Positions 13,781 through 54,830 of a stretch of 64,000 nt of DNA are shown in pieces; the stretch's first letter is position 1; each line of letters begins with the position of its first letter. The position numbers were made by a program, and so were the translations under genes. The DNA is taken from the NCBI RefSeq assembly GCF_036588685.1, contig NW_026963318.1, positions 1,674,001 to 1,738,000 on the forward strand, in the 5' to 3' direction. A model generated the notes under the pieces. It had not been told where the DNA came from, did not search any database, and was given only the letters and a program-made list of their open reading frames with translations. This DNA is from Mytilus trossulus. Its lineage: Eukaryota.

Positions 13781-14011
13781 AGTATATAGTGATGTAACTT
13801 ATTTAAAGACATTCTATTAAGTGATCGTTATTACTCTACGACGTTTCCATACTTTTGGAACAACTATAGTTATTTGAAATTACATTCTTTATATCTGGAC
13901 ACATATATTATGATGTGCCTGTTTATTTACTTTGACCTTAATTGTCTATTCTTTATAAATTTTATTAACTATGAAATTGCATTCAGGTATCGAGGATCAA
14001 ATTTATTCGTT

Positions 14012-22686: not shown

Positions 22687-22747
22687 CGGAGTAGCAGCTG
22701 TAGATAAGCAGTACAAAAGACAAGACGACGATGTATATAATGTCCAT
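22687..22747 (-). CDS. Signal-peptide first coding exon, copy A (MDIIYIVVLSFVLLIYSCYS + phase-1 G)
   Basis: ATG, hydrophobic core, C-x-S cleavage-type end and donor G|GTTAGC. The 61-nt length is identical in four paralogs with no indels or stops. Confidence 0.7.
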
Positions 22748-22927
22748 AAAAATATATCCAACGATGTATATCCTAATATTATATATACATATACATGTAT
22801 TGTTGTACAGGTATATCATATCTAATGAATTGGTTTTTCTATGCTCATTCTATTTGCACTAACGTAGAAAGAACCAGAACGATTATTCAATTGCTTTAAA
22901 GTGTTATAAGTATAAACAAGTACATAA

Positions 22928-23052
22928 GTCAGGAATATGACAGTTCTTGTCCATTCGTTTTTGATGCGTTTTGTTTTTTGATTTTGCCATGTGATTATGG
23001 ACTTGCCAAATTGATTTTCCTCTGAGTTCAGTATTTTTGTGATTTTACTTTT
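22928..23052. mobile_element. Short retroposed fragment inserted in the presumptive 5' UTR/TSS region of copy A
   Basis: TACATAA direct repeats at 22921-22927 and 23053-23059; empty site at ~34565 in copy B. Confidence 0.8.
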
Positions 23053-23059
23053 TACATAA

Positions 23060-23170
23060 CATCTTAAGTTGACTGCACAATAGGTGTTTATAATTCATTA
23101 ATTTATATATAAGATTGTTTACACTAACGTTTAAAACGTTTGGTCTCTATCAGTTAAAATGCACTTGACA
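23060..23170 (-). promoter_or_regulatory. Putative core promoter of copy A
   Basis: TATAAA on the minus strand (23087-23092) and forkhead-type TGTTTAC (23116-23122); the block is conserved in all four units. Confidence 0.4.
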
Positions 23171-23829
23171 TACATACTTCCATTCATAAAATATAAGCTT
23201 TAGATAGACAATACAAAAACGTATATTAATCGATTGTGCATTGATGAACTAGAAAACATACTCTATTACTTGTTACAGCAATTTTAATCATTCCGATGAT
23301 AAAACTTACCATTATTCACATTACAAGAAAGAAAAAAAGTATTTCGTCACATTGGATGGTTTTCATTAACATGTACTTTGTAATTATCATTGACTAATAT
23401 AAATTTCATTGAATCGATTTAGTATATTAATTTATAATAAGAAGAAATGCTTCATACCTAACATGTGAACATGATCAAAGCTTTTACAGAAAAAAAAACA
23501 TTTAATTTCTGATAAATACATGTTATTCTACAATCATGAAAGTTCGAGTTGTAGCAAATTTTCACTTATATGTCCTTGCTCCTTACATTATTGTGGCATC
23601 GTCACATACAACACGTGCTAACATGAATGTTGGAATGTTTTAAGGAAAACCATTTGATTTCGGAGTTTTTATCAATTGTTCTCACCGAATCAAAAGTACG
23701 GATTTTCATGAAACATACACGTTGTTTAATTATATTACACATACATCTTTAAATGTCATCTTGTAAAATACAAATTCTTCTTTAAAACCGTGCAGTTTTT
23801 CTCAATTTCACTTTAAGTTGTTTTTATAT

Positions 23830-24330
23830 TTAATTTTGATGGAATACTTTTGATGAATGGTGTATCTCCCTCATCATAAAATGAAATCATAATTTGTTTT
23901 TCTTACATACGATTCACACGATTTGTATTACACATACAAAAGTAGCATTAAATGAATCAACTTTGTTTCAATTTGAATCAATGCTTAATATTTGGAATTA
24001 ATTCTTTCATGCTCAATCAAGCTGCAATTACCACATGTGAATCCGTCAAACGGAACTCTTGGTGTTTATCAGCTAACACATACTATTTAGAATTGATGAA
24101 AGTTAATTAAGATTTTACGGGGTTTCCCTAAGTGGTGAAGATTCTCTATATATGATGTTGCAGTTTATTTAATGTAAGTGGGATTTAGACCTGTCTCTTG
24201 ACACTTAGGTTAGATCAAAAGAAGACATTTGTTTTTTGTGGAATTTATCAAGATTCCATTGCATGTGCACGGGGTTTATATGGTTGAAAAGGAGCTTCCA
24301 CTAAAAAATGTTTGTGCTATTGTCGATTGT
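23830..24330. promoter_or_regulatory. Module E, copy 5, with consensus kB site
   Basis: CACATGTG, TTATCAGCTAACAC and GGGGTTTCCC (24119-24128); ~1 kb upstream of promoter A. Confidence 0.5.
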
Positions 24331-24759
24331 TGAAAGATAAAAGTGATAAATTTCAAAGAAAAATAAATAATTAAAACACATTCAAATCAAGCTCAGTAGT
24401 TCAATCTAGTATTTTAGAGGGTTGAAAGATACCAGAGGGACATTCAAACTTATAGGTCAAATAATTTGACAACGCCATGGATAAAAAAGAAAAAGACAAA
24501 CAGACAAATAATAGTACACTAGACACAACATAGAAAACTCTGAAACTGTTGATGATCTAGTGTGCTTAGGAAGGGTTAGCAGATCCTGCTGCTCATTGGT
24601 TATGCCCAAGTAGCCAATCAAGTCAAACCAATAATTTACTTCACCCAACTAGTCAATTAACCATCTTTATATTGACCTTACATCGATTATTGAATACTCT
24701 TTTATCAGACATTTCTAACATTGATGAATTAATTGGACGTGTAACGTCAGGCGGAAAAT

Positions 24760-25345
24760 ACTATTAGTTACATAGTGTGCTAGTGACCTAATAAGGTATA
24801 TATAGGGTCAGTAAATTCCATATGGTATGAGAGCGAAGCTCGAATCCCCATATGGAATTTACTGACCCCATATATACCGTATTACGTCACTAGAACAGTA
24901 TGTAACGAATTGATCTTACCGCCTATCTTAACGTGTAAAATTAAAACTAGTGACCTATCAACTATTAGCATTGAGAAACTACTTTCATTCTTCCATTGAT
25001 CTCAATAAAAACAGATGCAAACAGAAACGACTTGTTAGGTTTAAAAGTGTTCCTTAAATTTATTTCTGTCTAAATTATCAATTTCTTCGTCTGTTGAAAC
25101 CTTGAGGATTTTTTCTCAGTAGCGTTTTGTTTTTATAAAGGGACGCAACACCACTACTAACCGTGTATAAAATAAGCCCTGCCTCCCTTCTTACCTTATA
25201 TGGAATATAAAGGGACGTAACACCACTTCTTACCGTGTATGAAATAAGCTCCGACTCCCTACTAACCTAATATGAAATATACACGGTCTCCACGCGGACG
25301 CTTTTAACCTATCATATTCCTAGAAATGTATAGGAGGTAAGATAA
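24760..25345. mobile_element. Hairpin-bearing non-autonomous element (family H)
   Basis: Imperfect inverted arms of ~60 bp around GAGCGAAGCTCG, plus an internal 72-bp tandem duplication (25136/25208). Confidence 0.75.
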
Positions 25346-27392
25346 TAAGTCATATCAAGGCAAAAGAACATTGTATAATATAAACTACTGAAGCACGGAT
25401 TAGGAACATGTTATTTATCAAGATAATAGTCCACATGATGATTGTCATCTTAAAAGGGCAAAGTATTCTGACTCCATGACGAACAGTTTTATTTATATCA
25501 CTAAATGTTGGATTATTAGTGGAAAGCCTAAACAATATCTTTGGCTTTATATGTGACTTTTTGCCATAGCGTTGTCAGTTTATTTTTGATCTATAGGTTA
25601 GAATGTCCTTCTTGTCTCTTTTCATTAAAACTGCACCAGCTGTTAAGGTTACAAAATGCTTCACACGAAGATGTCAATATATAAACTTTTTTTTAAGTTT
25701 GTGTTAAAATGGAATTCGAATAACAAATAGTAATTTTAGTGCTTCTCGGGTTGTTGAAATAAAATTTAGTTCGTCGTACGTTCATGAATATTTATGACAT
25801 GAGACCATTTGTCCGCACTTAAAATCCTTGCGGTCACCTTTCTGACCATCGACTCTCGCTATAGCCTAAAGAAGACGTGTATTCACGGATGATTTAATGT
25901 GAATTTGTAATTGGAATTATGATATTATTGTGTTTATGTTTGTATTTGATACATACAGTGATGCATTATATAGAATTAAAGAGGTTATAGCGAGTAGCAC
26001 ACCTCCATTATGTCTTTTGTTCTTTGTTAAGGTCATAGAATATAATTACTTTATATTCGGACGAACGTATTGAGGGAGAATATAACTAGAGTATATTTAT
26101 AGTATACAATATTCAAAGTCTGATGAATGTTAAGTCATGCGTTATGTGTTCTATATAAAACGTTCAAATCAATATAAATAAGGGACTGTTCACTCTCGTA
26201 GGTCTTTTAAAGATGTCTTTTCATCTCGTAATCATCTGTTTTACAATAAAAATAGCGATGTACACATAATATATAATAGCTATTCATTTAGCTTACTGGT
26301 TTTGCCACACTTATATCCTGTTTACATTAATAGCAAACGGTATCATTCAAATTACTATTTACACAGAAGTTCAATTGGTGGCATCGTCCTGTTTTGCGTT
26401 AAATCTAAGCAATTACTTTAAAAACAGAAGGAAGTTAAATGATTCTATTTGAAAACTCGTATTAATTATTCTATCATGCTTATCTGGAGTTGCGTTTGAA
26501 ATGAGCCATTGGTATAACATTATCACCATATGAATTAAGTCTGTCAATTTGAATAGCAGATAGAAACTTATCAATTTCATCTACATGTTTAATCTTAAAA
26601 CAGAATATTTATGTTGTTTTCGAAAGAAAAAAATGCTTCATTTTGCAATTTTATTAAGAAGTAAACAGTCTACAAATTTGCACAGGTTAACTTCTTTTCT
26701 ATCCCGTGTTCTAATAATACTCATTCAATTCTTATAAATACTTAGTGTTGCAACCATACAACTACAAATTATAGGTATTTTTTTCATATTATAGAAACAG
26801 AAGATGTGGTGTTCTTTTCAATGAAACAGATATTTACTAGAGACCAAATGACACAAAAATTAAAAGCTTTAGTTCACAATACGACCTTTATCAATGAGCA
26901 AAGTTCATACCGCATAGGCAGCTATGAAAGACCCCGAAATGACAAATATAAAACAGTGCAAATGAGTAACCGAACACTCTTTTTCATGTACAAAAATAAA
27001 GTTAAAAAATATATCACCAAGATAACGGCGAGTGTTGTTAAAATGATCAAATGATTGCAATTATGACGGGACTTACTGAGTTTAGTCATAAACTGTGATT
27101 CATAACAGCACTTAAAAAGTTTTCTATTAAAGGTTCAAAATTGCTGTGAAGTTGTCATGAAAAACACGTGATGTCATGAAAGCTGAATTTCATTTAGAAA
27201 TACACTTTTATATTAGAATGTCTTGCGATTGTTGCCATCCTATTAAAAGTACGGATTCTCATGAAACAGATAGGTTTTAAAATTATTGCATCACATACTA
27301 GTATTTCTGTATCATATATTAGAATTGTCTAAGGAACAATATCAAATTTGTATATGATTCATTTAGTTCTTGCGTAATGCATGTACAATTAA

Positions 27393-27971
27393 AGGAGTAG
27401 GTTCAGTAAAGTCCTAAAATGGCCCCCTTTTTTAGCGTAAATTTAAAATTAGGATTTATTGACCAATATCACAATAAAGTATAGCTAATGAAGTGACTAG
27501 ATAGGAAACAAGTCATTTTGTTGAAAATTTAAGTTCCTGCGTTTTATTATGACGTCACAAGTTGTACTAATACTGATTTTTTACGAAAAAAACAATGCAA
27601 ATGGGTTCAATTCCATAGATTATTAGACAGGAAACATAGAGCGCATACGTCGACAACAGAGATCTTTTAAAATAATGTTTGTGAAGGCATTTTACATGTC
27701 TCATTTCAATATTTAATTTGTCGACGCCTGCGCTCTATATTTCCTGGTCCTAAATGTGGTTGAAATCCAGCTGATTTTGTCAAATTTCACCAAAATCTCT
27801 TATCTTGACCTTTTTGGGATGTAAAAATCAACTTGTAAGAATAAAACTTTGGCAAAAAAAGATTTATTTTACTTTATCACATGTCTTTAAAGTCAACTTA
27901 AACCAGTTTTTGTCTTGTAACAATGAACTTTATAATCGGGGCCAAATTAGGCCTTTGCCGAACTTACTCCT
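27393..27971. mobile_element. TTAA-flanked MITE (Kolobok-like)
   Basis: TIR AGGAGTAGGTTCAGTAAAG / CTTTGCCGAACTTACTCCT with TTAA on both sides; absent from paralogous units. Confidence 0.85.
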
Positions 27972-29105
27972 TTAAAACAAAAGAATTACACAGAAATATT
28001 TCAATGTCTGCCCACTTCAAGAAAATTTCTTGTACGATTAAATGGCTATTAATTAGTTTGTATTGCCATTTACCATATCAGTATTATTATCAGTAACTAT
28101 CAATTTATCAATTTAACAATCAATTGAAAGAAAGTAATATGCCCCTATCAAATTACCTTTGAACAAATATCCTCGCTAACACTAAACTTATTGATGAGGA
28201 GAATGTATTTTTTTGGTAAATTTGACGCCCTAATATAAAATATGTTTTATTGATCTCAGATTTTCTCATTTAATTTTAAATATATGTACAAAAATGACGT
28301 TGGCTTTGATAAAACCATGTTTAAGTATTATGCCAAATCAATAGAACAAATTTTATATAGTATTTTCGGTACGATTTATACAGCTTATAGGCGTATTGAA
28401 TATATTAACTTCCTATTTTTGGTAAAAAAAATTATATGTCGTCCTTTAGATGTTTTTCTGTTGATGTTTGTTTTAAGGTTGCTGTTTCATTTACTTTTAG
28501 CACAAATCGTCCTATTAAAAAACTTCTCTAAATCCTCAAGCAAACATTTCCCAATAGTATTGTCAAATCGTAAAACCTTATTACTGTTAGATTATATTTA
28601 CGACTTCAGGTTTTTATTTATAATATATATAGATGTTGAAAACGAACTCTATGCACTTCTTACAATGATGTGACCAGTTTTACTGCAAATTGAATACTTT
28701 TGGTGGTAAGATTTTAAATGCACTGCTTTAAGAAATATGTTGAAAATGCATCATATGATCATCATGCTATTTGAACGTATATCTACAATGTATCGTGAAA
28801 GATCATATGTGATCATTGATAACATGTCTTTTCTGTTTTTATACATATGTATTCAATGATGTTTAAAGAAGCTACTTCATACAGGTAAGCCTTGCATATA
28901 TTGCTGTTCAAATAGTTAGACGTAAATAAAGAAACGAGAGATACAAATGGACATTCAAACTCATCTCGGGTCTTTGATAAAAGCCTTGAAATAAGTTGCT
29001 TTAAAGAGATGATAAAGAGATTAAGCATTTCGACAGCATATCGCTTAAGATTTGGAAACAAATAAAACCCGAATAATTCGAAAGTATTCGACATTCATTA
29101 GTTAA

Positions 29106-29485: not shown

Positions 29486-31536
29486 TTAATTGGGAAATAA
29501 ACGGTGCTAAGATCATCTAATCTTAAACTTCATAAACCTCACAACGAGCTTTGCATTTAAATTCCTTCACCAGGTTATGTAATATATATTTATGATTGAA
29601 TGGGATCATTAAGGGGAAACGCTTATCTCAGATTTTCTCTGAACGATCATTTATCTAAGCTTTAGTGGAATTAATCAATAATTTCAAATCTACACAGGAT
29701 TATGGTAGCTCACGCAATGTTGACTGTACATTGAAATAATTGTGTTTACATATTTTCAGCAGTAGGTTTATTCTAAATTTGCAAGGAAATGTAACAGTAG
29801 ATAGTGGTATTAAATCTACATAATGAGTTTCAAAGAATTGATAAAAGGATGTAAACCATTCCGTTTCTAACTTAAGATGTGTATGTATCATATAAAGAAC
29901 TGAAATGTTGAATTATTATAGAGAGAGTGCATAAAACACCAGTACCAGCAGCACTTGCAAGTCATTAAGGGGCAAGCTGAGGACAGCATCCGGGTACGGG
30001 ATTATCTTGCTGCGATGTCTGCTCTTTGGTCGGGTTGTTGTCTCTTTGTCATATTCTCCATTTTCAGCCTCAATTTAATTTTTATTACCTTTACAAATGA
30101 ATGATGTCTGGTGTACTTGTAGGCTTTTAAATAGCCAACTAGGTAGGAATACTTGATTGTCATGAATAAATTATCAATTTCATGCTGGTAGCAATAACAG
30201 CATAAAACAAAATGAAATTTTTGATTCAAACGTTTTTATCGTAGTAAGTTCTTCGTATTAAATAACAAATATGTATTAATTACGTAATATTATGATATAA
30301 TAATCATTACTTGTATTAATCTAAAACTTTTTCGTTTCTTGTTCATGGGTTAAAATTTGAAATGATGCGATAATATAAGATGATTCAGAATCGAACAGAC
30401 CCGTAACTTAATCATCTTATTATATAAATAAACATTTATCGGAAAAATATTTATTAAATCAAATTTGAAGATCGAAAATCGATAGAAATAAACCAATATC
30501 AACACGGTGCATCTCAAAACAGATAAGTAAATGACATGAAGAGATAATAGTTTTCTTAAAATTCCTCGCAATTCCCTCCCTCACCCATCCTCATGATATC
30601 TTCACAAGTTTTTGTTGAAATTGATCGCATTTTTTTGGTTTTCTCTCATTCCACAGTAGTATAACATTTCCTGACTTAAATACTTCCTCGACAAGAATTG
30701 CAATTTTGCGTTACATTTATTAAACATTTAAAAGTTTAATTTTATTCTGGAACTATGTTGCATTTAATTTGTGGTATCGTAACTGGGTATGTTTCGTACG
30801 TAAAAAAATGAAACAATGCAATATGTATTTCAACCATGCATTCTGTTAAATGTTTAACCCCTTGAGCATCATATAATTAACTAAAAAACTTAGTGTCTTG
30901 CATAATTAACGGAATGTTGTCGTTTTTCTTGATGTTTATCGTCCATTTGAATTAACACTTATTAATATTTAGTTTATTGATTTATTTTACGCCGAAAGTT
31001 TTGTTCAAAAATTTGCTTTGACCATTTAAGTGCATGTCAGTCTTTGCTTTATAACAAACATTTTGAGTATTGATATAGTCGTTGATAATGTTTTTCAGTT
31101 TTTAGTTGAATGATTTTGTATCATTAGGGAAAATACATTGTTGCTTCGTCTAGTGTCATTTAAGTGATGTCCTTTTAATTGACTCTCTTGCCATTTAAAG
31201 CGGATATAGAAATTCTTATGTTATCAAGAAAAGCTAGACATGTAACTGAACCTGAATTGCAAAAAAAAACACGTTTGTATTGAATCATTGATGAAAGAAT
31301 AAATTGTACTTATTGATGGGTTTTATGAGGTTGTATTTGACAGAATTCGAGAACTTATTAAGGGATGGCGTGATTAAATGTCATAAATGTGCAGCATGTT
31401 GTGTTTTATCTGCTTTAGATTGATTTGTCTGGATTTTTACAAATAATCAATTCCAAAGTAGTCTACATCATCGACAGTTAGTCAGGAAGCTAGTTAGTTT
31501 GTCATTTTATAACATTATGTTAGTATTGCATGGCAA

Positions 31537-34133: not shown

Positions 34134-34194
34134 CTGAGTAGCAGCTGTGGATAAGCAGCACATAAGACAATACGACGATGTATATAATGTCCAT
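34134..34194 (-). CDS. Signal-peptide first coding exon, copy B (MDIIYIVVLSYVLLIHSCYS + phase-1 G)
   Basis: Canonical donor CAG|GTAAGC; 3 synonymous and 2 non-synonymous differences from copy A. Confidence 0.75.
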
Positions 34195-34569
34195 AAAAAT
34201 ATATCCAACGATATATATCCTAATATTATATATACATATACATGTATTGTTGTACAGGTATATCATATCTAATGAATTGAATGAGCATGGGTCCAGATTA
34301 GTTATGAAACCGTCACAATATATGTATCTCCTTAGTTCAGTTGCGAAACAAGTTAACAGAGAAAACAAACTGCCCAATAATAAAATAGTTAGTCATATAT
34401 ATGTCCGAATTTTACTTTATAATATTTTCTTTTCCCAAACTTCTTTTTCTTTAATTTCTTGATTTGATATGTTGTTCTCTGCTAGTAAAATCTATTTGCA
34501 CTAACGTAGTAAGAACCAGAACTATCATTCAATTGCTTTATAGGGTTTATAAAGTATAAACAAGTACAT

Positions 34570-34682
34570 AACATCTAAAGTTGACTGCACAATAGGTGTT
34601 TATAATTCCTTAATTAATATATAAGATTGTTTACACTAACGTTTAAAACGTTTGGTCTATATCAGTTAAAATGCACTTGACA
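34570..34682 (-). promoter_or_regulatory. Putative core promoter of copy B
   Basis: TATAAA on the minus strand (34599-34604) and TGTTTAC (34628-34634). Confidence 0.4.
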
Positions 34683-35311
34683 TATATACGTCCATTCATA
34701 AAAAACGTATATTAATCGAGGGCCCTGATGAACTAGAAAACATACTGTATTACTCATTACTGCAATTTTAATCATTCCGATGATAAAACTTACCATTATT
34801 CACATTACAAGAAAGAAAAAAAGTATCTCGTCACATTGGATGGTTTTCATTAACATGTAATTATCATTGACTTATATAAATTTCTTTAAATCGATTTAGT
34901 ATATTAATTTATAATAAGAAGAAATGCTTCATATCTAACATGTGTACATGATCAAAGTTTTTACAGAAAACAAGCATTTAATTTCTGATAAATACATGTT
35001 ATGCTACAATCATGAATGTTCGAGTTGTAGCAAATTTTCACTTATTTTTCCTTGCTCCTTGCATTATTGTGGCATCGTCACATAAAACACGCGCTAACAT
35101 GAATGCTGGAATGTTTTAAGGAAACCATTTGATTTCGGAGTGTTTATCAATTGTTCTCACCGAATCAAAAGTACGGATTTTCATGAAACATACACGTTGT
35201 TTAATTATATTACACATACATCTGTCATACAATGTCATTTTGTAAAATACTAATTCTTCTTTAAAATCATGCAGTTTTTCTCAATTTCACTTTAATTTTT
35301 TTTTATATTTA

Positions 35312-35815
35312 TTTTTGATGCAATACTTTTGATGAATTGTGTATCTCCTTCATTTTAAATGAAACCATAATTTGTTTTTCTTACATACGATTCACAAGAT
35401 TTGTATTACATATACAAATATAGCATTACATGAATCAACTTTGTTTCAATTCGAATCAATGCTTAATATTTGGAATTAATCCTTTCATGCTCAATCAAGC
35501 TACAATTACCACATGTGAATCCGTCAAACGGAACTTTTGGTGTTTATTACCTAACGCATTATATTTAGAATTGATGAAAGTTAATTTAGATTTTACGGGG
35601 TTTCCCTAAGTGGTGAAGATTCTCTCTCATATGATGTTGCAGTTTATTTAAGTGGGATGTAGACCTGTCTGTTGACACTTAGGTTAGATCAAAAGAAGAC
35701 ATTTGTTTTTTGTTTAACTTATCAAGATTCCATTGCATGTGCACTGGGTTTAAAGAATTTTAATGGTTGAAAAAGAGCTCCTACTAAAAAATGTTTGTGC
35801 TACTGTCGATGGTTG
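35312..35815. promoter_or_regulatory. Module E, copy 6, with consensus kB site
   Basis: CACATGTG, GGGGTTTCCC (35597-35606) and CTTATCAAGATTCC. Confidence 0.5.
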
Positions 35816-36244: not shown

Positions 36245-36830
36245 ATTAGTTTCATAGTGTGCTAGTGACCTAATAAGGGTCAGTAAATTCCATATGGTAT
36301 CAAAGCGAAGCTCGAATCCCCATATGGAATTTACTGACCCCGTATATACCGTATCACGTCACTAGCACACTATGTAACGAATTTATCTTACCGACTATCT
36401 TAACGTGAAAAATTTAGACTAGTGACCTATCAACTATTAGCATTTAGAAACTACTTCCTTTCTTCCATTGATAAAAAAAAGAAGATGCAAACAATAACAT
36501 GAATAACGACTTGTTATGTTTAAATGTGTTCTATAAATTTATTTCCATCTAAATCATCAATTTCTTCGTCTGTTGAAACCTTTAAGATTTTTTCTCAGTA
36601 GCGTTTTGTTTTTATAAAGGGACGCAACACCACTACTAACCGTGTGTGAAATAAGCCCCGCCTCCCTTCTTACCTGGTATGGAATATAAAGAGACGTAAC
36701 ACTACTTCTAACCGTGTATGAAATAAGCTCCGCCTCTCTACTAATCTAATATGAAATATACACGGTCTCCACGCGGACGCTTTTAACCAATCATATTCCT
36801 AGAAATGTATAGCAGGTAAGATAATAAGTC
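36245..36830. mobile_element. Family H element, duplicate of 24760-25345
   Basis: Same position in unit B. Confidence 0.75.
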
Positions 36831-41508: not shown

Positions 41509-43016
41509 AAAAAACTTTTTAACAGCCAATTAGTTAGGAACTCTTGGTTGTCATATATGCTGTTATCAATTTCATGTTGGTTTGGCTCTTTTCCGTTTGC
41601 ATGAAGTCTAGGATAATTTGTTTATATATTTAATTTGGTGTTGAAAGTTTTGTTAAAAATGTCGCTTTGAGAAAAGTGCAAGTTGTCGATATTTACTGTA
41701 TCAATTGTATACATTTGGAATATTGGTGTAGTTTTTGAACAATTTTCTTAATATTTTAGTTGGACGATTTTGATTGATTACATTGTATATTTGTTTTAAT
41801 GTGTCGTGCCTTTTAAGTGATTTCTTATTAATTGAGAGTCTTGTCACTTAAAATATATTCCAATTCTAATGTTATTTTCAAAAACAAGACAAGTAACTGC
41901 ACATGAAATTAATAACTTTCCTATTGAATCATTGATAAATGGATAATATTTACTTATTGATGGGTTTTACGTGACAGATTTGGAGATCGTATTCAGGGAT
42001 GGCGTGATGAGAAGTCATAAATGTGCAGCATGTTATGTTTTCTCTGACTGAGATTGATTTGTCTGCAGTTTTTCAAATAATCAATGCGAAAGTAATCTAC
42101 ATTATTCAGTTTGTCAAATCATTTCTTTATATATCTTTTTAAATTTTTCGTTGCCATTTGTAGAAAAATGCAATTAACTGTGTAAAGACTATTAAATACA
42201 GAATGGACATGCTGCATATTCACAAAATATAATGTCGCATTCAATAAAAAATTCCTGACATCTGTAATATTGCACGAATAAAACTCAACTGCCATACTCC
42301 TGACTTGGTAAAATTGATTTGTTTATCAAGCAATAGTCCACTAAACTTAAAAATCGAAATATGATGTGAAGTTCAGCTAGCTCTAAAACCAGGTACAATC
42401 AACCATATCTACATAAAAAAAGTCTGTTGGATTTCATTATTCTTCTTCAGTCTGTTCATCTTTTCTTTGAACATAATGGTGCTTATACGTTTCAACAGAC
42501 AATGTTCGTTTTCCAAACAATCAAGAAGTTAGTTCTATCTGAAGACTCTGTAATAGTTTTTAACTGATATATGATTCATATATAAATGTACCATATACAT
42601 AAAACAAATCACATCTTTTCAAAGAATTCACTTCGCCTAATTTTGAGCTGAACAAAATAATATATATAAATACTGTTTTATTGATGATATTGTTTATAAG
42701 CTAATAATAATAATGTAAAGATTATGTAGTCAGTCCAATACCATATCAGACGATTTTGATCCAAGAGGCCCAGTAAAGTTTATAGCTATCCCTTCAGACA
42801 AACTATGCATAAGTATGAAATTTGTAATCTTATAGTTCCTTTTTCTGACATCTAAACATAACTAAATTAAAGATGACATACACTGTAAAATCATTGTCAA
42901 TGGCATTACTTGTAATGTTATGGTAAATCAGATCATGTGTAAGTTAAAACAACTCATGACAGTTTAACTGGTGCTCTTAAAATAATTGCCACATATACTG
43001 TAGATGTATTGACAAA

Positions 43017-43769
43017 TTATCCAGTTTGCTATATCCTTTAACTTTTGCTTCACAGATGATGTTTTTAAGTAAACAATTCAAAATTTGGTGACTCTGTTGA
43101 AAGAATCTAACCTATCGAACTATAGATAAAGGATACTACAAATACACATAATTCTGCCTCATATCTTGACTTTCAATTGACAATGAGTGTCGGTTGAAAA
43201 CAAAACTTTATGACAAAAGAGATGATTTCAGTTTCCAGATTGTGACCTCCCATTCTATGTAGAAACATTCAAGCAGCGTCTTCATACGCAGTACATATTC
43301 CTAATTGATACAATATTCCTTTTCTTGCATTTCCGATAATGATTTTTTTAATTGACGGTTGCTACTCAAAAAGAAACTAGTAAACCAAGAGTCCAAGATG
43401 GTGAAGTTGAAATCATCCCTTCTTAAATTTTACAGACGCCATCACGATTTGGCTCACATATGATATCGGATATGTTCCTTATGTCGTAACTACCATCCCC
43501 TTACCTTGTCACGAATGTGACCTACCGAAACAGACTATTTACTTGATTTGTAATAAAATAAGCAACACGACGGAGGAAACTTATGAAGCAGGATTTGTTC
43601 ACACTTCCGCAGCACCTGATATCACCCCCAGTGTCTTGTCGCGTTTGTGTTGCTTAATCTTTAGTTTGTCGTGTCCTGTGCACTGTTTGTCTGTTTCTAT
43701 TTTAGCCATGGCGTTTTCAGTTTATGTTTATGAGATTGAACATCCCTTTGGTATCTTTCGCCCCTCCTT
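43017..43769 (+). mobile_element. Degraded Penelope-like retroelement fragment
   Basis: IKDTTNTHNSASYLD...RLKTKLYDKRDDFSF with frameshifts; same family as 17513-18204; absent in other units. Confidence 0.85.
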
Positions 43770-44089
43770 TAATGCTCTTATTGAAACAAGAAAAATGGCA
43801 ATAGTGTTTATTGCAACACTGTTACTAAATCACTGGTATGCAGCACCGATCTCAATAACTTTGATGTCAAATTTTAATTTGCATGCTAATACCCAAATTA
43901 AGGCCTATCTTACTATTTTAAAGCTTACATTATTGATCTTTCAAAAGTTGTTGAATGAAAGTTTTAAGTCGCAAATAAAAAAAATCATTAGCTTAAACAA
44001 TTACAATTGTTTGGACAGTTACATGTATATATGATGTTCTCTTCGATTTTTTAAAAGTTTCACTTCAATAATAATTTTGTGTTGCTTAC

Positions 44090-44150
44090 CTGAGTAGCAG
44101 TTATAAATAAGCAGCACATGGTACAATACAATGATGAATGTGGTGTCCAT
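44090..44150 (-). CDS. Signal-peptide first coding exon, copy C (MDTTFIIVLYHVLLIYNCYS + phase-1 G)
   Basis: ATG, intact frame and donor CAG|GTAAGC. Confidence 0.7.
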
Positions 44151-45250
44151 TAAAACATTTATCCAAAGACAGATTTCTTAATAATACATATACATATACA
44201 TGCATTGCTGTATACAGATGTCATATCAAATGATATGAATGAGCATTATTCCAGTCTAGTTTTAAAAAACCACCATAATATATCTATCTTCTCAGTGCAG
44301 TTGAAAAAAACAAAGTGGATAGAGAAAACAAACTGTCCAATAATCAAATAGTCGGTCAAATAAAAAGATATATTTGCTGTACTAATAAATCCCAACTTTA
44401 TCTTATTTTCTTTTCCTGAACTTTTGTTTTGAATTTTCATACTCGATATGTTTTTATCTGCTAGTAAACCCGTTTTGCACTTTCGTTATAAGAACGAAAA
44501 ATATAGTCCAATTACATTAAAGTGTTTATAAAAAATAAACAAATATGTCACATCTAAAGTTGTCTACACAATTTGTGTTTGTAATTCCTTAATTTATATA
44601 TAACTGTTTACACTTACGTATTAAACGTTTTGTCTGTATCAGTTAAAAAAACCTTAACGAATATACGTCCATTTATAAATTATAAGTTTGAAATAGACAA
44701 TGAAAAAAACGTATATTAATCGATTGTGTCCTGATGAACTAGACATATTACTCAATTTCTCATTACAGAAATTTTAATCATTCCGATGATAAAACTTGAC
44801 ACTATTCACATCATGCACATTACAAGAAAGAACCAAAAAAATCATCATATTGTCTGGTTTTCATTAACACATGTAATTATCATGGATTCGATTTAGTATA
44901 TTAATTTATAATAAGCAGAAATGCTTCATATCTAAAATGTGTACATGATCAAGGTTTTTACCAAAAAAACCCATTTAATTCTAATAAACACATGTTATGA
45001 TACAATCATGAAAGTTCGAGTTGTAGAACATTTTCTTTCATTTTTCCTTGCATTATTGTGGCATTGTCACATGCAACACGTGCTTACATGAATGTTGGAT
45101 TGTTTGAAGGAAAACAATTTGATTTTTGATTGTTTATCAATCGTTTTCAGCCAATCAAAAGTACGGATGTTCATGAAACATACAAGTTGGTTTTTTATAT
45201 TACACATACAACTTAAAATGACATCTTGTAAAATACTTATTCTTCTTTAA

Positions 45251-46694: not shown

Positions 46695-46742
46695 TCAAAC
46701 AATGCAGTTTTTCTGAGTTTCAATTTAAGTTGTTTTTATTTT

Positions 46743-47200
46743 AGTTTTGATGCAATACTTATGATGAATTGTGTATCTCCTTTATCTTAAAATGAAATCA
46801 TAATTTGTTCTTTTGCATACGATTCACACGATTTGTATAACATATATCAATGTAGCATTAAATGAATCAACTTTGTTTCAACTTGAATCAAAGCTTTATA
46901 TTTGGAATTATTTCTTTCATGCTCAATCAAGCTACAATTACCACATGTGAATCCGTAAAACAGAACTTACGTTATTTATCAGCTCACACATTACATTTAG
47001 AATTGATTGAAGCTAATTTTGATGTTACGGGTGTCCGCAAGTTGTGAAGATTCTTTATCAACTGTTGTTGCGGTTTCTTTGGGATGGATGTAGAACCGTT
47101 TCTTGAAACTTCGGGGAGATGAAAAGAAAACATTTGTGTTTATGTTTAACTTATCAAGATTCTTGTGCATGTGAGCGGGATTTTATGAATTTAGGTAATT
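46743..47200. promoter_or_regulatory. Module E, copy 7
   Basis: CACATGTG, TTATCAGCTCACAC, TGCGGT (47069-47074) and CTTATCAAGATTC; the kB position is degenerate. Confidence 0.5.
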
Positions 47201-50200
47201 AGAAATCTTATTTGCAATTCTCGTCTGTTGAAACATAAAGATGTTACATTTCAAAAGAGATCTATAATTAAAGAACTTTTAAATCATGCAAACCAGTACA
47301 GTCCATGCGCTAAATTTAAATGGTCAGTCCAGTTTAGTCAAGATGTTACATGTTTACGTCATCTTACTAGTCAATTTTCTATGTTCATGTTTACATCAAT
47401 TATTAAAAACCATTTTATATAACATGTCTTACTTTGAGGGATTAACAGGGTGTTCAACGTCCATCTACAAATATCAAAATCATTTCAGGCAAATAATTTT
47501 TAATAGGAACTGTGTTTTATAGTTGACTACTGAAGCGTATATTTATAATGTGCTTTTTATCAAGGTACACTTTGATAACCACAGGGCGACTAGTCATCTT
47601 AAAAGGGCAAATTAATCTGACTACCTGTCAATCGGTCTTTGTTTTTACCCCTAAATATTTGTTTAGTAGCGGAAAACCTAAAAACTTGTTTTTAAGTCTT
47701 TGATTGGATCAGTAACTCTATTCAGATCATACCTACGACCATCTGTAGCTGAGGATGCTAATATTTCAGTCAAACCATTTATGAGGATAATTATCTTATG
47801 CATTTAAGAGTTTTTCGGTGTTTCGTTAATCATACGATTTAACCTTCTGGTTAAAACCTGACGAGAACAAGTCGAGAGTGGATACCTAGGGGTTAAAATA
47901 ATATAATTAACGATACACCCAAAAATTAACAAAAATGTGGAATTTTCGTTTTATATTATTAAACTGTTGCTGTTTTAAAATTTCATGTTCCATTTTAAGT
48001 GTCCACAAAATCTATCTGCAGGACGACTAAAAAAGCGGCCCCAAAAATTAAAGAGAAAAAATAAGAACAGTGGGGAAAGAATAAAATTGATAAAATTATA
48101 CCGTTGATGAAAATGAGAGAATTACCGAAATATATTTTACGCAAGGCTATGCTAGGTAAACTAATTATTTATCTTACCAAAACAAAAACATCAGTTTCAT
48201 TGGAAGATACTAGTTAAAGTTAATTCTAAACACAAAAAGTTATTAAATAAAGTCTAAATATTTCCGATCTATCTATTTTTGGACTATAAAAGTCAATACG
48301 ATCGTTTTAGGGTCGTTTTCGTTTATCTCATACATCTTGTCAGGCACTATATTTATGTTGTTACGTTTCGAAAACGTGAAACTCTGACATCAAATGTGTG
48401 TTAGTTAAAACTAACAGAAATTAATATCTGTTACATAATTTTATCAAAATTCATGGAATAATATCTGACCATTAAAACTGCACCAGTTGTTGAGGTTAAA
48501 CAATGTTTCACACGGAGATGTATATAAATAAACTGTTGTTTTATTAAGTTTGTTGAAAATGGAACTCGAATAATTAATCTGCATTAAAGTGCTTCTTGAA
48601 CTATAGTATGTTTATATCATACAGTATCTAAAGTATGATGAATGTTAAGTCATGCGTTATGTGTTGTATAAACAAAATATGAGGAACTGAACACTATCAT
48701 AGGTCATCTTATGCTTTCATCTTGTACTCAGTTATTTTAATATTCAAAATAGCGCTGTTCACATAACATATACTAGCTATTCAATTAGCTTACTCGTTTG
48801 TTTTTCTAATATCCTGTTTACATTACGAGAAAACGGAAACATTCGAATTACTATGTACCCTAAAGTTCAATCAGTGTCATCATCCTGTTTTCGTTAAATT
48901 TAAGGAATTACTTAAAGAAAAAAGAGAGAAATTTAACGAATATATTGAAAACTCGTATTAGTTATTCTATAATGCCTATCTGGGGATGCGTTTGAATTGA
49001 TACATTGACATTTCATTAACACCATATGCATTTGATTTGGAAACTTGAATAGCAGATATAAACTAATCGGTTTTATCTACATCTTTAATCTCAAAACATA
49101 ATATTTTTCTAGTTTTCGTAAGAAAAAAAATGCTTCTTTATTCAGATGAAGCAGTTTAGACATTTGCGAAGGGTATCTTCTTTTACTACCCCGTATTACA
49201 ATAATAATCATTCAATTCTTCTAATGCTTTTTTGTGTTGCAACCATATAACTACAAATCATAGAGTTATTGCATTTGTTTAAAAAAGAAAGAAGATGTTG
49301 TGTACTTGTCAATAAAACAGATATTCACTAATGATCACATGATTCATGAATTAATAGCTATAGGTCAACGTACGACCTTCAACAATGAGCAAAGCTAATA
49401 CCGTATAGTCTGCTATAATAAAAAAAAAGCTCGAAAAGACTGACGTAAAACAAAGCAAACGAGAAAAGTAACACCATAATTCATGCAAAAAAAATCACTC
49501 AAAGAAGAAAGTTTCATCACGATAACGATAAGTATTGTTTAATCTATCAATTAAATGCAATTAAGACGAGATATACTGAATTTGGTCATAAATTATGATT
49601 CATAACAGCACACGTATTACAATTATTACAAGTCTTCTATTTAAGGTAAATAATTACTGTGAAGTTATCATGAAAAATATGTGCTGTCATTAATGTTAAA
49701 TTTTATTAAGAAATGCATTTTTTATTAGAATGCCTTGCAAATGTTTTCATCCTTTCAAAGTACGAATGTCATATCACATACATGTAATGTAATTAATGCA
49801 TCATATTATAGCATTTCTGTAATATTTATTGAAATTTTCTAGACACCCATATCTTATCTTTATCATTGAATCCTTAAAAAAAGAAAAGAAAACAGTTATA
49901 TTTTAATTGCCACCCACTACCTTAAAATGTTTTGTAACAATTATATGGCACATAAGTCAGTATTGCCATTTACCGTATCAGCAATTTTATCAGTAGTATT
50001 TAACAATCAGTTGCAAGAAGTATCATGCACTTATCAAATTACTTTTGAACCAATAGCTTTGCTACCATTAGACTTATTGATAAGGAGAGTTAATATTTTG
50101 TAAATGTGCCGCCCTAATGTTAAGTATGTGTTCAAAAATAACATTGTTAATCTTGGCTTTAACCATGTTTAATAACATATTGATAAAAGTATTATTCAAA

Positions 50201-51567
50201 AGCTTTACAACAATTTTTATATAATAAACTCTTGCCGCTTTACAGAACTCAGAATATTTGATTATTGACGTGTTTATTTGTTGAAAACTGTATGATGTCC
50301 TTAAGATACACTATGGTAAGTTTTGTTGTCAGGTTGCTGTTTGATTTTCGTTTTGCCCACATTGAAAACTCTTCAAATTAAAATCATAATTAAAACAATG
50401 ATCTCTTGAACAATTCCTTACAAGTTTTGCAAATCTGACAACCCTATAACTGTTAAATTATATTCACGACTTCTGTTTTTTATTTATACAATATGAGGAT
50501 GTTAGAAATGGGCTCGAGCTCTTTGCACTCTTAAAATGATATGTTGTCATTGTGCGTGCAAGTCGAATACTTCTGGTGATAAGATCTTCAAGTGCATTAC
50601 GTTAAGGAATGTGTTAAAACACATCACATGCTTATCATACAATTTGAACGTATATTTACAATGTATCTTGAAAGATCATCTGGAATCATTCAGAAGATCT
50701 CTCTTTTTTTTTTTTACAAACAATGTTTCAGGAAGCTGCTATAGACCTTGCAGATCTAAATAGCTCTACGCAAATAGAGAGGCAAATATACTAAATGGAC
50801 ATTCAAACTGATGACGACGGGGCTTTGATAAATCCTTGCAAAGAGGTGTATAAGTGGTTTAGCCGTTCGACAGCATTTTGCTAGGATAAGAAACAGAATT
50901 TTAAAATGCATATAAATTCCGTAAAACCGAAAGTTATTAGACATTTAATAAAAACAAGTTTTCTATGTTATGTCATGTGTACTATTGTTTTTTCTGTTTG
51001 TCTTTTTCATTTTTAGCCACGGCGTTGTCAGTTTGTTTTAGATTTATGAGTTTGACTGTATCTTTCATCCCTCTTTTAATGAAGTTTATTTCTTCTAAGC
51101 GTTATGATCCTTCTCTCTTTCCCATTACTTATCCAATTTCCCTTTTCATTCCCTTCGTCGATGAACAAAAGAGCATTGCTCAGTAGTGTTGCAGACAATA
51201 TGCATCAATTTCTTTTTTAACAAGACCATATAGTTGATATCAAATCTTTAAAAAAAATGTTTGTTAAAAGTCTTTGATTTACTCAGTTTCATATAGGCCA
51301 ATCATATCATTGATTTTTTGTTGGTCGTAGTTGGATCTATATTATTCGCATCTATGTTTTAAATGGATATGTTGGTAAGTATAGTTACCACGCGTATAAT
51401 TTTTATTTTTCTTATTATTGCATAATGCTCATCAGCTGATGTCAGGGTAATCCAGTCCAATCTAGTAAAGAGCTAAAAAAGTAACTGCCTATCATCCATG
51501 ATCTGCAATCAAAAACGATTTCACAAAAGACCAAAATAATTAAGATATAAATAAACTTTTCATACAT

Positions 51568-51907
51568 AACAGGATTAAATTTTGTATTGACGCTAGACGC
51601 GCTTTTCGTCTATAAACGACTCTTTAGTGACGCTCCTAAAAAGCTTAAAAGACCAAATAAAGTACGAAGTTGAAGAGCATTGAGTACCAAAGTTCCATAA
51701 AGTTTTGTCAAATAAAGCTATGGTAATCTACTCCTGAGGTAGAAAAGTATTTAGTTTTTTCTAAAAAACAGGTTTTGTAAAAAGTTAATTTATTAAAATG
51801 ACCATATCAAGGATGATTCATGTCAGCACAAAGTGCTGACTACTGGTCTAGTGATACCCTCGGGGAATTAAAACTTCACCAGTAGTGGAATCGATCCAGT
51901 GGTTGTA
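51568..51907 (+). repeat. Dispersed repeat family R2
   Basis: Matches 3192-3452 and 41228-41508. Confidence 0.8.
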
Positions 51908-54299
51908 AGTTACACATGTTGATAACTGAGTGAACTATGGCTGGTGTCCTTGTTAATGTTCAATTAGCAATAGAGACAGAACACTTGATTGTCATAAGTG
52001 CTGTTATCAATTTCATGCTGGCTGCAATAGCAGCATAACATCAAACGAATTTGTTGTTTTAAACTATCAAATTGCAGTCAGTAAGTTCTTCGCCTTAAAA
52101 AACACTGAGATATAACTTACGTAACATGATGATATACTACTAATTTGTAATCTAAAATGTTTTAAGTGTTTAACTCATTTAATGCTCATGCATGGGATAA
52201 GATTTGAAATGATGTGATAACAAATTCAGAATTCAGAACTCCGTCGAAACAAATACTATTTTGTGCATAACCTTCATACATTTTACAATGTTATTTCATT
52301 CCTTGAAATACATATTGAATTTTACACTTGAATCTTAAAAGTTTATGTTTCATACTTTATGTCAACCATGCATACAGTTTGATTATTGTTGCACAGACAT
52401 TCATGTAATTATTTATACACTTTACTGTCTAGCGTTATTAACGGAATGTTGTCAAGTAGACTGACATGCTGAAGGTTACCATAGTACTATTGTACTGAAA
52501 CTTGTATGCTTTTCCGTAATTATATTGTCTCGACTTATCGGTTGAATAATCACTTATTTAGAATAAATAATTCGTTAGGTTATGTTGTGTTGCAACCTTT
52601 GTTCATAGTGCAAGTCGGTATTTATTGTTTAACACACAGTAACAATATTGATTGAGTCTCTGATAAATTTCTACAACTTTTAGTCGGCCGATTTTGTATT
52701 TTTGCATCATATACATTTTTGCATTGTGCTTTTCTTTGAACTACTTCCTTTTCTTATGTGAATCATAAAAAGATGACGTGTTACGGCAAATGAAAAATAT
52801 CTTTCGTATTGAATCATCGATTAATGGATTAACTGTTACGCAGTACTTATTGATAGGTTTTACGAGACTTGATATTACAAATTCCGAGAAGTGTTTAAGG
52901 AATGGCGTGATGAGAACTCATAAATGTGCATCATGATGTGTTTTCTCTGCCTAGCATTGATTTGTCTGCAGTTTTACAAATGATCAATACGAGAGTAACT
53001 TACATTATTTAGTTTGTCAATTTATCAAACGAACGTTACTTTATATACTACATTAAATTGTTCTTTGCAATCTGTACACAAATGCAATTAACTGTCTAAA
53101 GATAATAAATAAAGTATATACGTGCTGCATATTAACGAAATCTTATGTCGCCAATCATTAATAAGTTATCAAAATATGAAGTATGAAGCTATATAAAAAC
53201 TCAAAATTAGTACACTACATTAATTTATCAAACAATAGTCTATCAATCATTAGACAGGAACGAAAGATAGTGAAACGTTTAGCCTGCTAACAATTATTCA
53301 TGAGAACATGTCGATACCAAGTCATGAATATAATATGGTAGTTGTTTTCTATTCCTTTGATTTTCTTCTGCTTTTAAGTTTGAAATTTGATAAGTGACTT
53401 TTAGTTATGAATTTTCTTTAGAGTTCCTTATTTTACCTTTGTCTGTTTGTCTTTTCTTTGGACATGATGCTTTTTACTTTTCAATTTTAGATTTTTCGTT
53501 AACTTATCCAAACGTAAGTTCTATCATAAGAAATTGTAATATTTTTTACTAATATATGACCCAAGAACAAAATCTAATCTTTTCGTCAAATTCGCCAAAT
53601 TTTGAGCTTTGAACAAAAAGTAATTGTTTTCTTTTAACAGGACATAAATACTGTTTTATTGATGATATTGTTTATATGCTAATAATGACTACGTAGAGAT
53701 TATACATTACGTCCAATTTAACATCAGACAATTTTGAAACAAAATGAGAACTTGACACCTATCCATTCAAACGAAATAATGCATAAGTATGTATTTTTTT
53801 TTTATCTTTCTTAAAAGTTTTTCTGACATCTGAACTGAACTATATACAAAATGACATAATTACCCTATACAATCATTTTTCATGACATTGCTTGTTATGT
53901 TATCAAGGTTAATCAGATCCTGTGAATGTTGGACGATTGATTCAGACTCATAGCAATCTAATTTGTGTTCTTAAAATAATTTCCACAACTACTGTAGATA
54001 TATTTAATGCTATAATTAAAAAAACAAAAATGGCAATACTTTTTATTCCAACACTGTTTACTAAATCACAGGTGTGCAACACCGATTGCAATAACTATGA
54101 TAAATTTTATTCAACATGGTATATGCTTAAATTTAGGCAGATTTTATTGTTTTATGACTGATGTAATTGATCTTTAGGGTTAAAGTATTTAGGGGCAAAT
54201 AAAAAAAAAACCAAAAAACGGATTAGCTTCTTTAATTATTATAATGAAATCTTGGAATTGGATTAAGTTTCACTCAAGTTAAACGTGTGTGTTGCTTAC

Positions 54300-54360
54300 C
54301 TGAGTAGCAGTTGTAGAAAAGCAGCACATGGGACAGGAGAACTATGAATGTAATGTCCAT
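54300..54360 (-). CDS. Signal-peptide first coding exon, copy D (MDITFIVLLSHVLLFYNCYS + phase-1 G)
   Basis: ATG, intact frame and donor CAG|GTAAGC. Confidence 0.75.
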
Positions 54361-54696
54361 TAAAACATATATCCAACGACAGATTTCCTAATATCATACA
54401 TACATATACATTTATTGCTGTCCACAGATATCATATCCAAGGAAATATAAGAGCATTGTTCCAGATTTTTTTTGAAACCATCACAATATAAGTATCTCAT
54501 CACTGCAGTTAAAAAACACAGTGAACAATGAAAACCAACTGTCCGATAATCATATACTCAGTAAAATGAAAATATATTTTTCCTGTACTAATATATTCCA
54601 ACTTTACTTTATTATGTATTCTTTTCCTGAACTTCTTTTGCTTAATTTCTAGACTCGATATGTTTTTGTCTGCTAGTAATACCTTTCTGCACTTAC

Positions 54697-54830
54697 GTAA
54701 TAAGAACCAGAAATAGCATCCCCTATGACTTTATAGTGTTAATAAAGATTAAACACGTATGTCACATCTGCACAATAGGTGTTTATAATTTCTTAATTCG
54801 AATATTAGACTGTTTACACTAACGTATAAA
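54697..54830 (-). promoter_or_regulatory. Putative promoter and short non-coding leader exon of copy D
   Basis: TGTTTAC (54811-54817), TATAAA on the minus strand (54782-54787) and donor-like C|GTAAGT at 54696. Confidence 0.35.

What the first reader, a model, noticed from the sequence alone, without database searches (positions are those of the whole stretch)
22687..54830. Tandem array of four promoter + signal-peptide first exons with no gene body in between
Seen: four minus-strand 61-nt segments spaced 11447, 9956 and 10210 bp apart. Each has ATG, a 20-aa hydrophobic peptide ending C-Y-S, and a phase-1 GT donor, with no indel or stop even though the flanks are full of indels. Each has its own promoter-like block. 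The conserved blocks I tested between them held no shared frame. Established: signal-peptide exons commonly end in phase 1, and variable first exons spliced to constant exons occur in clustered protocadherins and UGT1A. Inference: these are alternative promoters and first exons of one secreted or membrane protein whose body lies left of base 1. Unlike Pcdh or UGT1A, only the cleaved leader would vary, so the array would diversify regulation or trafficking rather than the mature protein.
Basis: partly seen in the sequence, partly recalled or inferred. Interest (0 to 1): 0.82.

Follow-up and report, generated by a model that had tools for sequence, protein, structure and literature searches.

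The report
Tandem leader-exon modules, partner exon unresolved
Four tandem copies (a fifth lies just outside the window) of a promoter plus a 61-base signal-peptide-like first exon are real and were kept by selection, but they look more like small, partly decaying duplicate genes than alternative starts of one large gene, and only RNA data can settle which.

Summary
Minus-strand ATGs at 22747, 34194, 44150 and 54360 each open a 61-nt frame that ends G|GT; unit A has the weaker donor GTTAGC. The frame shows coding-type substitution: pN/pS is 0.31, against 1.13 and 0.60 in the shifted frames. The peptides are strongly hydrophobic. The family occurs only here and in a collinear array on contig C9.

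The copies sit inside whole-unit 10-11 kb tandem duplications, not promoter-plus-exon cassettes. I found no conserved coding body inside the units. I also found none in the 44 kb downstream of unit A, where a convergent C1q-domain gene limits the space.

Every copy is followed 0.25-2.7 kb downstream, on the same strand, by an island starting with an invariant AG|ACAAATCAAT (10 of 10 copies). Read in phase 1, it closes after 4-16 codons in most copies and after 38 codons in C. My best reading (0.42) is separate small transcription units, largely decayed or encoding micro-proteins.

Protein searches returned only unspliced genomic ORFs.

The parts
22687..22747 (-). Leader exon A: ATG plus 20 codons plus G. 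The donor at 22686-22685 is GTTAGC, which is weak.
   Evidence: This module (22502-24205) is absent from the C9 copy.
34134..34194 (-). Leader exon B, donor GTAAGC.
   Evidence: The peptide is identical in C9 copy E9.
44090..44150 (-). Leader exon C, donor GTAAGC.
54300..54360 (-). Leader exon D, donor GTAAGC.
   Evidence: The C9 counterpart is split by a 30.6-kb TIR element.
22748..22850 (-). Promoter-proximal conserved block of A, with the TATA-like motif TATATATAAT about 40 nt upstream of the ATG.
   Evidence: 60-81% identity between units, against about 50% at 400 nt downstream.
34195..34650 (-). Promoter-proximal conserved block of B.
44151..44630 (-). Promoter-proximal conserved block of C.
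54361..54834 (-). Promoter-proximal conserved block of D.
20643..20763 (-). Block 2 of unit A. It begins with the invariant AG|ACAAATCAAT, so a candidate exon 2 would start at 20761. The phase-1 frame gives DKSI then a stop.
31310..31430 (-). Block 2 of unit B. Candidate exon 2 start at 31428; DKSI then a stop.
41954..42064 (-). Block 2 of unit C. Candidate exon 2 start at 42062. The frame stays open for 38 codons (D then KSISVRENITCCTFMTSHHAIPEYDLQICHVKPINK, then a stop).
52847..52967 (-). Block 2 of unit D. Candidate exon 2 start at 52965; DKSMLGRENTS then a stop.
60815..60957 (-). Block 2 of a partial unit (H) that has no leader exon.
19423..19707 (-). Block 3 of unit A, a conserved non-ORF island. 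Other copies lie at 30098-30373, 41515-41581, 51931-52220, 60382-60503 and 63099-63255.
46700..46960 (-). Locus-specific conserved non-coding element, 89-91% identical between copies. It lies 1.0-2.8 kb upstream of leaders A (23791-24050), B (35269-35528) and C (this copy).

Best explanation
The array is a lineage-restricted tandem family of small separate transcription units. It is not one gene with many leaders.

Whole 10-11 kb units were duplicated in tandem. The contig holding the window carries five leader-bearing units plus partial ones. A collinear array on C9 carries three or four. Each unit has a conserved promoter-proximal island and a 61-nt first exon. That exon encodes a hydrophobic, signal-peptide-like or transmembrane leader ending in phase 1.

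The donor most likely pairs with the nearest conserved acceptor in the same unit. This is the island that begins with the invariant AG|ACAAATCAAT, 0.25-2.7 kb downstream. Read in phase 1, it gives D-K-S-I/M in every copy. The frame then closes after 4 codons (A, B), 11 codons (D), 16 codons (G) or 38 codons (C).

The products would therefore be at most 24-64 residue peptides dominated by the leader. The family is either largely decayed or encodes micro-proteins.

Shown: the exons, their coding-type constraint, the whole-unit duplication, the lack of any conserved long ORF, and the invariant acceptor-led island.

Inferred: promoter activity, the donor-acceptor pairing, and translation.
For: Units are collinear from end to end.

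The leader frame is constrained. Its length, ATG and GTAAG are kept even in the copies that are 30-40% diverged: G, G9 and the Logan ORF P0002.

The promoter, exon and proximal intron form a conserved island.

Block 2 follows every leader on the same strand. It occurs only on C43 and C9. Its first 12 nt, AGACAAATCAAT, are invariant in 10 of 10 copies, and the window has exactly four exact matches, all on the minus strand.

The implied introns are 245-2705 nt.

No other coding-like segment was found in the units.

No body was found in the 44 kb before a convergent C1q gene.

Disabling lesions in single copies fit redundancy or decay: the GTTAG donor in A, the deletion of the A module in C9, the TIR insertion in the C9 D-like exon, and the donor GGT to GAT change in P0001.
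Against: There is no RNA evidence of any kind.

Block 2 has no frame shared across the clades. It carries 2-, 5- and 10-nt indels and in-frame stops, and it shows no synonymous excess. Its invariance could therefore reflect DNA-level or RNA-level signals, such as an enhancer, rather than an exon.

Its polypyrimidine tract is weak in units A-D.

Purifying selection on the leader is hard to reconcile with products of only 24-31 residues, unless the hydrophobic segment is itself the functional part.

The pN/pS estimate rests on only 57 nt.
Confidence: 0.42

Rival explanations
1. The modules are alternative promoters and first exons, and their donors all splice in cis, across the downstream units, to one shared body. 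The conserved islands inside the units are regulatory.
For: No private coding body is detectable in any unit, yet the leader frame is under constraint. First exons lack acceptors, so read-through with distal splicing is mechanistically possible, as in the clustered protocadherin and UGT1A loci (established knowledge).
Against: No candidate body was found in the 62 kb downstream that I could read. The space is bounded at 44 kb by a convergent C1q-domain gene. Forty minus-strand ORFs of 60 aa or more gave no significant Pfam match. A conserved AG-led island in each unit would compete as an acceptor. No protein of 50-257 aa carrying any of the leaders turned up in 5.8 billion proteins. The base rate of such clusters is low.
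Confidence: 0.2
2. The modules are dead 5' relics. They are promoter-plus-exon-1 leftovers of a gene whose body was lost in this structurally unstable, transposon-rich region. Nothing productive is made, and the conservation reflects past selection and the recent date of the duplications.
For: Lesions segregate between copies and haplotypes. Partial units without a leader exist. There is no body, and no spliced protein was found in the databases.
Against: ATG, the 61-nt length and GTAAG are intact in 8 of about 11 copies, including old ones, with a compensated codon shift between G and G9. The promoter-exon island is better conserved than its surroundings even against G. The leader shows a synonymous excess.
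Confidence: 0.2
3. Each unit is a complete secreted-peptide gene of the conotoxin or antimicrobial-peptide type. It would have a conserved signal exon, a long phase-1 intron, and short hypervariable downstream exons that my tests could not recognise.
For: In most conotoxin superfamilies exon 1 is the signal sequence and intron 1 is phase 1, with long and poorly conserved introns (PMC3862624). My pairwise tests have low power for short, fast-evolving exons: exon 1 itself ranks within the noise in the pairwise tests.
Against: No conserved AG is followed by a phase-1 ORF shared by all units. The one candidate, at D 50113, was rejected because the unit types differ by 2-3 nt indels there. No positionally conserved terminal ORF was found. 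No cysteine-framework similarity appeared by tblastn.
Confidence: 0.1
4. These are not exons at all, but a chance open frame inside a conserved regulatory island.
For: The adjacent 75 nt of promoter is also gap-free and open in all six copies. The exon is no better conserved than the promoter.
Against: The synonymous excess is frame-specific. An exact ATG and a consensus CAG|GTAAG sit at the two frame ends in all clades. The hydropathy is extreme.
Confidence: 0.06

Closest known systems
Clustered variable-first-exon loci (clustered protocadherins, UGT1A)
   Same: A tandem array of first exons. Each has its own conserved upstream block and its own 5' splice site, and none has an acceptor.
   Different: No constant exons were found. 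The variable exon here is only a 20-residue leader, not a whole domain. Entire 10-11 kb units are duplicated, and each carries an acceptor-like island of its own.
Molluscan secreted-peptide genes with a separate signal exon (conotoxin superfamilies; PMC3862624)
   Same: Exon 1 is essentially the signal sequence. Intron 1 is phase 1. The introns are poorly conserved. The families are duplicated and fast-evolving.
   Different: No pro-peptide or mature-peptide exon with a conserved frame or a cysteine framework could be identified. There is no sequence similarity to any named family.
Single-pass transmembrane micro-proteins (sarcolipin, phospholamban, sarcolamban type)
   Same: The predicted products are 24-36 residues and consist mostly of one hydrophobic helix with a short polar tail.
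   Different: There is no homology. The tail length is not conserved. Translation and function are untested. This is a resemblance recalled from general knowledge, not a test.
Spliced-leader RNA gene arrays
   Same: Tandem promoter plus short exon plus donor, with no gene body.
   Different: Here the exons diverge with a coding pattern and start with ATG. The units are 10 kb long, not under 2 kb. No Rfam family matched.

Membership tests
Variable-first-exon cluster (Pcdh/UGT1A type) | Tandem first exons, each with its own promoter | tested here: inconclusive
   The exons and the conserved upstream islands are present. Promoter activity could not be tested.
Variable-first-exon cluster (Pcdh/UGT1A type) | Each variable exon ends in a 5' splice site | tested here: met
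   G|GTAAG in B, C, D and G; G|GTTAG in A.
Variable-first-exon cluster (Pcdh/UGT1A type) | Shared constant exons downstream of the last variable exon | tested here: not met
   None was found in the 62 kb read. A convergent C1q gene lies 44 kb away. Forty ORFs gave no significant Pfam match, only chance-level hits at E about 0.06. Small or novel exons cannot be excluded.
Variable-first-exon cluster (Pcdh/UGT1A type) | Cis-splicing of every variable exon to the same acceptor | not testable with these tools
Tandemly duplicated complete secreted-peptide genes (conotoxin-like architecture) | Signal-sequence exon followed by a phase-1 intron | tested here: met
   The 61-nt exon leaves one base over. 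Comparison with PMC3862624.
Tandemly duplicated complete secreted-peptide genes (conotoxin-like architecture) | Downstream pro-peptide or mature-peptide exons with an open frame in each unit | tested here: not met
   Only unit C keeps 38 open codons after the block-2 AG.
Cleavable N-terminal signal peptide | Short n-region, hydrophobic core, and small residues at -3 and -1 | tested here: inconclusive
   Hydropathy is at the 89th to 99.9th percentile. By inspection, C sits at -3 and S at -1 before G. The n-region carries D and no basic residue. No SignalP-type predictor was available.
Spliced-leader RNA genes | Near-identical non-coding leaders in short tandem repeats, with a matching RNA family | tested here: not met
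   Leaders differ at 18-38% of bases in a codon-like pattern. The units are 10-11 kb. There was no Rfam hit.

The most novel reading that the evidence does not exclude
A protocadherin-style cluster in which only a cleaved or anchoring leader varies. Five or more promoter-plus-leader modules would be cis-spliced across one another to a single small-exon body that has not yet been seen. Regulation or targeting would be diversified, while the mature protein stays the same.
Probability: 0.2. Interest if true: 0.7.

Novelty: new member of a known kind. Interest (0 to 1): 0.36.

Why it matters
If each leader splices inside its own unit, this is an orphan, lineage-restricted family of tiny genes. It would have been caught in the middle of birth and death by duplication, in a genome region that differs strongly between two assembled copies. 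That is a useful but ordinary example of gene turnover, and possibly a source of transmembrane micro-proteins.

If instead all leaders feed one body, it would be the first variable-first-exon cluster in which only the leader varies. That would be a clean system for asking what alternative signal peptides and promoters are for.

A single long-read cDNA or junction experiment separates the two readings.

Tried and rejected
RNA evidence
The sequence more than 40 kb left of base 1, and the C9 flanks, could therefore not be read.

Searches for a private body inside the units
- tblastn of all D-unit ORFs of 22 aa or more against the other units gave only hits with stops.
- Pairwise and six-way synonymous/non-synonymous scans on both strands found nothing beyond exon 1.
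- A scan for phase-1 terminal exons found no positionally shared candidate.
- A scan for conserved AG followed by an ORF gave one candidate, at 50113. I rejected it because the unit types differ there by 2-3 nt indels.
- Blocks 3, 4 and 5 and the 37.8 kb/50.0 kb block all carry indels that are not multiples of three.
- GC-rich islands turned out to be transposon fragments.
- A G/G9 island that is 94% identical (73664-73560) has no conserved frame or donor in A and B.

Protein databases
- Two word searches with read-through ORFs covered candidate lengths of 50-157 and 81-257 aa.
- One profile word search covered all leader variants.
- One full HMMER search ran against 1.84 billion representatives.
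- All four returned only two unspliced genomic ORFs.
- A match to the 21-residue leader alone would fall near or below the reporting threshold of the full HMMER search, so that blank is weak.
- I did not build or search any joined exon 1 + exon 2 sequence.

Other searches
- Rfam, tRNA and tandem-repeat scans found nothing relevant.
- Earlier scan notes held nothing on this locus.
Full report
SETTING

The window is G000:C43:1674001-1738000 of a 1.3-Gb, 541-contig genome. It is 31% G+C and has no N. To the left lie two C1q-domain ORF pairs on the + strand, at window -39891..-37516 and -22608..-21391. A LINE reverse transcriptase lies on the minus strand. I do not know the organism.

THE OBSERVATION

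The four segments are exactly as described.
- ATGs lie at 22747, 34194, 44150 and 54360 on the minus strand.
- Each is followed by 20 codons plus one G, then GT.
- The spacings are 11447, 9956 and 10210.
- B, C and D have the consensus CAG|GTAAGC. A has CCG|GTTAGC.

A fifth, more diverged copy (G) lies 11 kb right of the window, with its ATG at window 75082. It reads MDITYSIVRFSLLVNCCFFS plus G|GTAAG.

A collinear second array lies on C9 at 54.64-54.78 Mb. It is 75-98% identical, so it is either the other haplotype or a recent duplicate. It holds:
- two intact copies, E9 and F9;
- a G-like copy, G9, reading MDITYAVVVIPLLIIFCCFSG|GTAAGT;
- a D-like copy whose exon is split by a 30,569-bp element with TIRs of about 397 bp.

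C9 lacks the A module altogether: window 22502-24205 has no counterpart there.

A whole-genome pattern search for ATGGACA-N50-TCNGGTAAG found the seven intact GTAAG copies, all on C43 or C9. It also found one unrelated site, against four hits for the reversed control. DNA and protein searches of the genome found no other members.

IS IT A CODING EXON?

Summed over seven pairs, pN/pS is 0.31 in the ATG frame, against 1.13 and 0.60 in the two shifted frames. The two youngest independent pairs give 6 synonymous to 4 non-synonymous changes where 22% synonymous is expected (P = 0.011).

In a six-way alignment of whole units there are 31 gap-free, stop-free stretches of 12 codons or more, counting all six frames. 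The leader is the only one with a synonymous excess.

The peptides lie at the 89th to 99.9th percentile of hydropathy among 759 open ATG+19-codon windows. By inspection they end C-Y-S before G, which fits the small-residue rule at -3 and -1.

G, G9 and a database ORF (P0002) keep the ATG, the 61 nt and GTAAG at 30-40% divergence. G and G9 differ by a compensated one-codon shift that preserves the length.

Two cautions apply. The sample is only 57 nt. The 75 nt of promoter next to the exon is also indel-free and open in all six copies.

I accept the segments as real leader-type first exons. They sit in a conserved island from about -100 to +60. That island is 60-82% identical between units, against about 50%, which is unalignable, at 400 nt downstream.

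WHAT THE ARRAY IS

The copies are not cassettes. The 10-11 kb units are collinear along their whole length.
- A and B are 90-93% identical.
- C and D are 70-84% identical to them.
- Partial units without a leader follow A (window about 11300-18200) and lie between G and D (blocks at 60.4-63.3 kb).

LOOKING FOR A BODY INSIDE THE UNITS

No ORF of 70 aa or more looks like protein. The other tests were these:
- tblastn of all D-unit ORFs of 22 aa or more against the other units gives only matches interrupted by stops.
- Synonymous/non-synonymous scans of unit-unit, C43-C9 and G-G9 alignments give nothing beyond chance. The best P is 0.003 among 961 tests.
- There are 82 conserved AG columns. Only one non-trivial one is followed by a phase-1 ORF of 12 codons or more in all six sequences, at D 50113. 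It fails because the unit types differ by 2-3 nt inside it.
- Several conserved islands (blocks 3-5) carry indels that are not multiples of three.

LOOKING FOR A SHARED BODY

Transcription runs leftward. I could read 62 kb downstream of A, to window -40000. The + strand C1q gene ending near -21391 converges on the array, so a body would have to lie in the 44 kb between them. The minus strand there has only transposon-like ORFs. Forty ORFs of 60 aa or more gave no significant Pfam match at E up to 0.1. Four had chance-level hits at E about 0.06 and about 13 bits, far below the curated cut-offs. Small or novel exons cannot be excluded, because no comparator sequence exists for this stretch.

DATABASES

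I searched with read-through ORFs that contain the leader. These are stop-free references, not spliced models.
- The word searches covered candidate lengths of 50-157 and 81-257 aa.
- A profile of all leader variants was searched.
- A full HMMER scan ran over 1.84 billion representatives.

All returned only P0001 and P0002. Each comes from a single Logan contig shorter than 1 kb, and both read straight from the promoter through the exon into the intron, so they are unspliced. P0001 is an E9-like allele with the donor GGT changed to GAT and a Y to C change.

The blank has limited weight. A match to the leader alone would score near the reporting threshold of the full HMMER scan. Products under 50 aa were outside the length windows. 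I neither built nor searched a joined exon 1 + exon 2 peptide.

THE IN-UNIT ACCEPTOR-LIKE ISLAND

Every leader is followed on the same strand by block 2, which occurs only on C43 and C9. Its first 12 nt, AGACAAATCAAT, are invariant in 10 of 10 copies, including G, G9 and two units that have lost their leader. A second invariant run, ATGCTGCACATTTAT, follows.

The window holds exactly four exact matches, all on the minus strand, at 20752, 31419, 42053 and 52956. The implied introns are 1925, 2705, 2027 and 1334 nt. For G the intron would be 783 nt and for G9 about 245 nt.

Read in phase 1, all copies give D-K-S-I or D-K-S-M. The frame then closes after:
- 4 codons in A, B, E9 and the leaderless C9 unit;
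- 7 codons in the C9 D-like copy;
- 11 codons in D;
- 16 codons in G and G9;
- 38 codons in C and 45 in F9.

There is no shared frame across the clades, since they differ by 2-, 5- and 10-nt indels. There is also no synonymous excess. The island is therefore constrained at the nucleotide level. It could be a real second exon that is non-coding or decayed, or it could be a regulatory element.

JUDGEMENT

Base rates strongly favour tandem duplicates that are separate transcription units. The invariant AG-led island in each unit gives a nearby splice partner. The only stretch where a shared body could lie shows none.

I therefore rank [quoted passage not shown] first, at 0.42.

It lacks any positive evidence.

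Dead relics (0.20) fit the lesions that differ between copies. They do not fit the retention of every exon feature in old copies.

Undetected hypervariable exons, as in conotoxin genes where exon 1 is the signal sequence and intron 1 is phase 1 (PMC3862624), get 0.10.

A chance frame gets 0.06.

LIMITS

Noticed in passing
C9:54720054-54750622 (L021-L025; c9 local 80054-110622): A 30,569-bp element is inserted inside the D-like leader exon of the C9 array. Its terminal inverted repeats are about 397 bp long and start TATGGAACGCCGGAACTGTC. By eye it is flanked by a 6-bp duplication, TAATGT. It may be related to the giant long-TIR element noted elsewhere in this genome.
   Followed up: partly
window 22502-24205 versus C9 local 8874-9243: The whole A module, meaning about 1.46 kb of promoter region plus leader exon A, is present on C43 and absent from the collinear C9 array. 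This is presence/absence variation of a single leader.
   Followed up: partly
window 23791-24050, 35269-35528, 46700-46960: A 260-nt non-coding element is 89-91% identical between copies, which is better conserved than the leader exons. It exists in only five copies in the genome, all 1.0-2.8 kb upstream of leaders A, B, C, E9 and F9. There is none upstream of D or G. It is a candidate enhancer.
   Followed up: partly
L012:9560-9664 (window 73560-73664) and L027: A 100-nt island is 92-94% identical between G and G9, against a 75% background. It has no conserved reading frame, and it is only partly present in units A and B (20112-20165, 30782-30842).
   Followed up: partly
P0001 (Logan contig of 910 nt): This is an allele of leader B/E9 from another data set. 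Its splice donor is changed from GGT to GAT, and the leader carries a Y to C change.
   Followed up: no
L008:109-2484 and L009:7392-8609 (window -39891..-37516 and -22608..-21391): Two + strand genes, each with a coiled-coil exon and a C1q-like exon (Pfam C1q at E 2e-4, just under the cut-off). They converge on the array. A LINE reverse transcriptase lies between them at L009:4380-6170 on the minus strand.
   Followed up: partly
window 17480-17868, 43411-44031, 50941-51183, 56886-57188: A dispersed short repeat gives the pseudo-peptide ...LAMALSVCFRFMSLTVPLVSFVPLL... in either orientation. It accounts for several of the GC-rich islands and is probably a SINE or MITE.
   Followed up: no
window 25134-25281 and 36613-36760: A 72-nt unit is repeated 2.1 times at the same relative place upstream of leaders A and B.
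   Followed up: no
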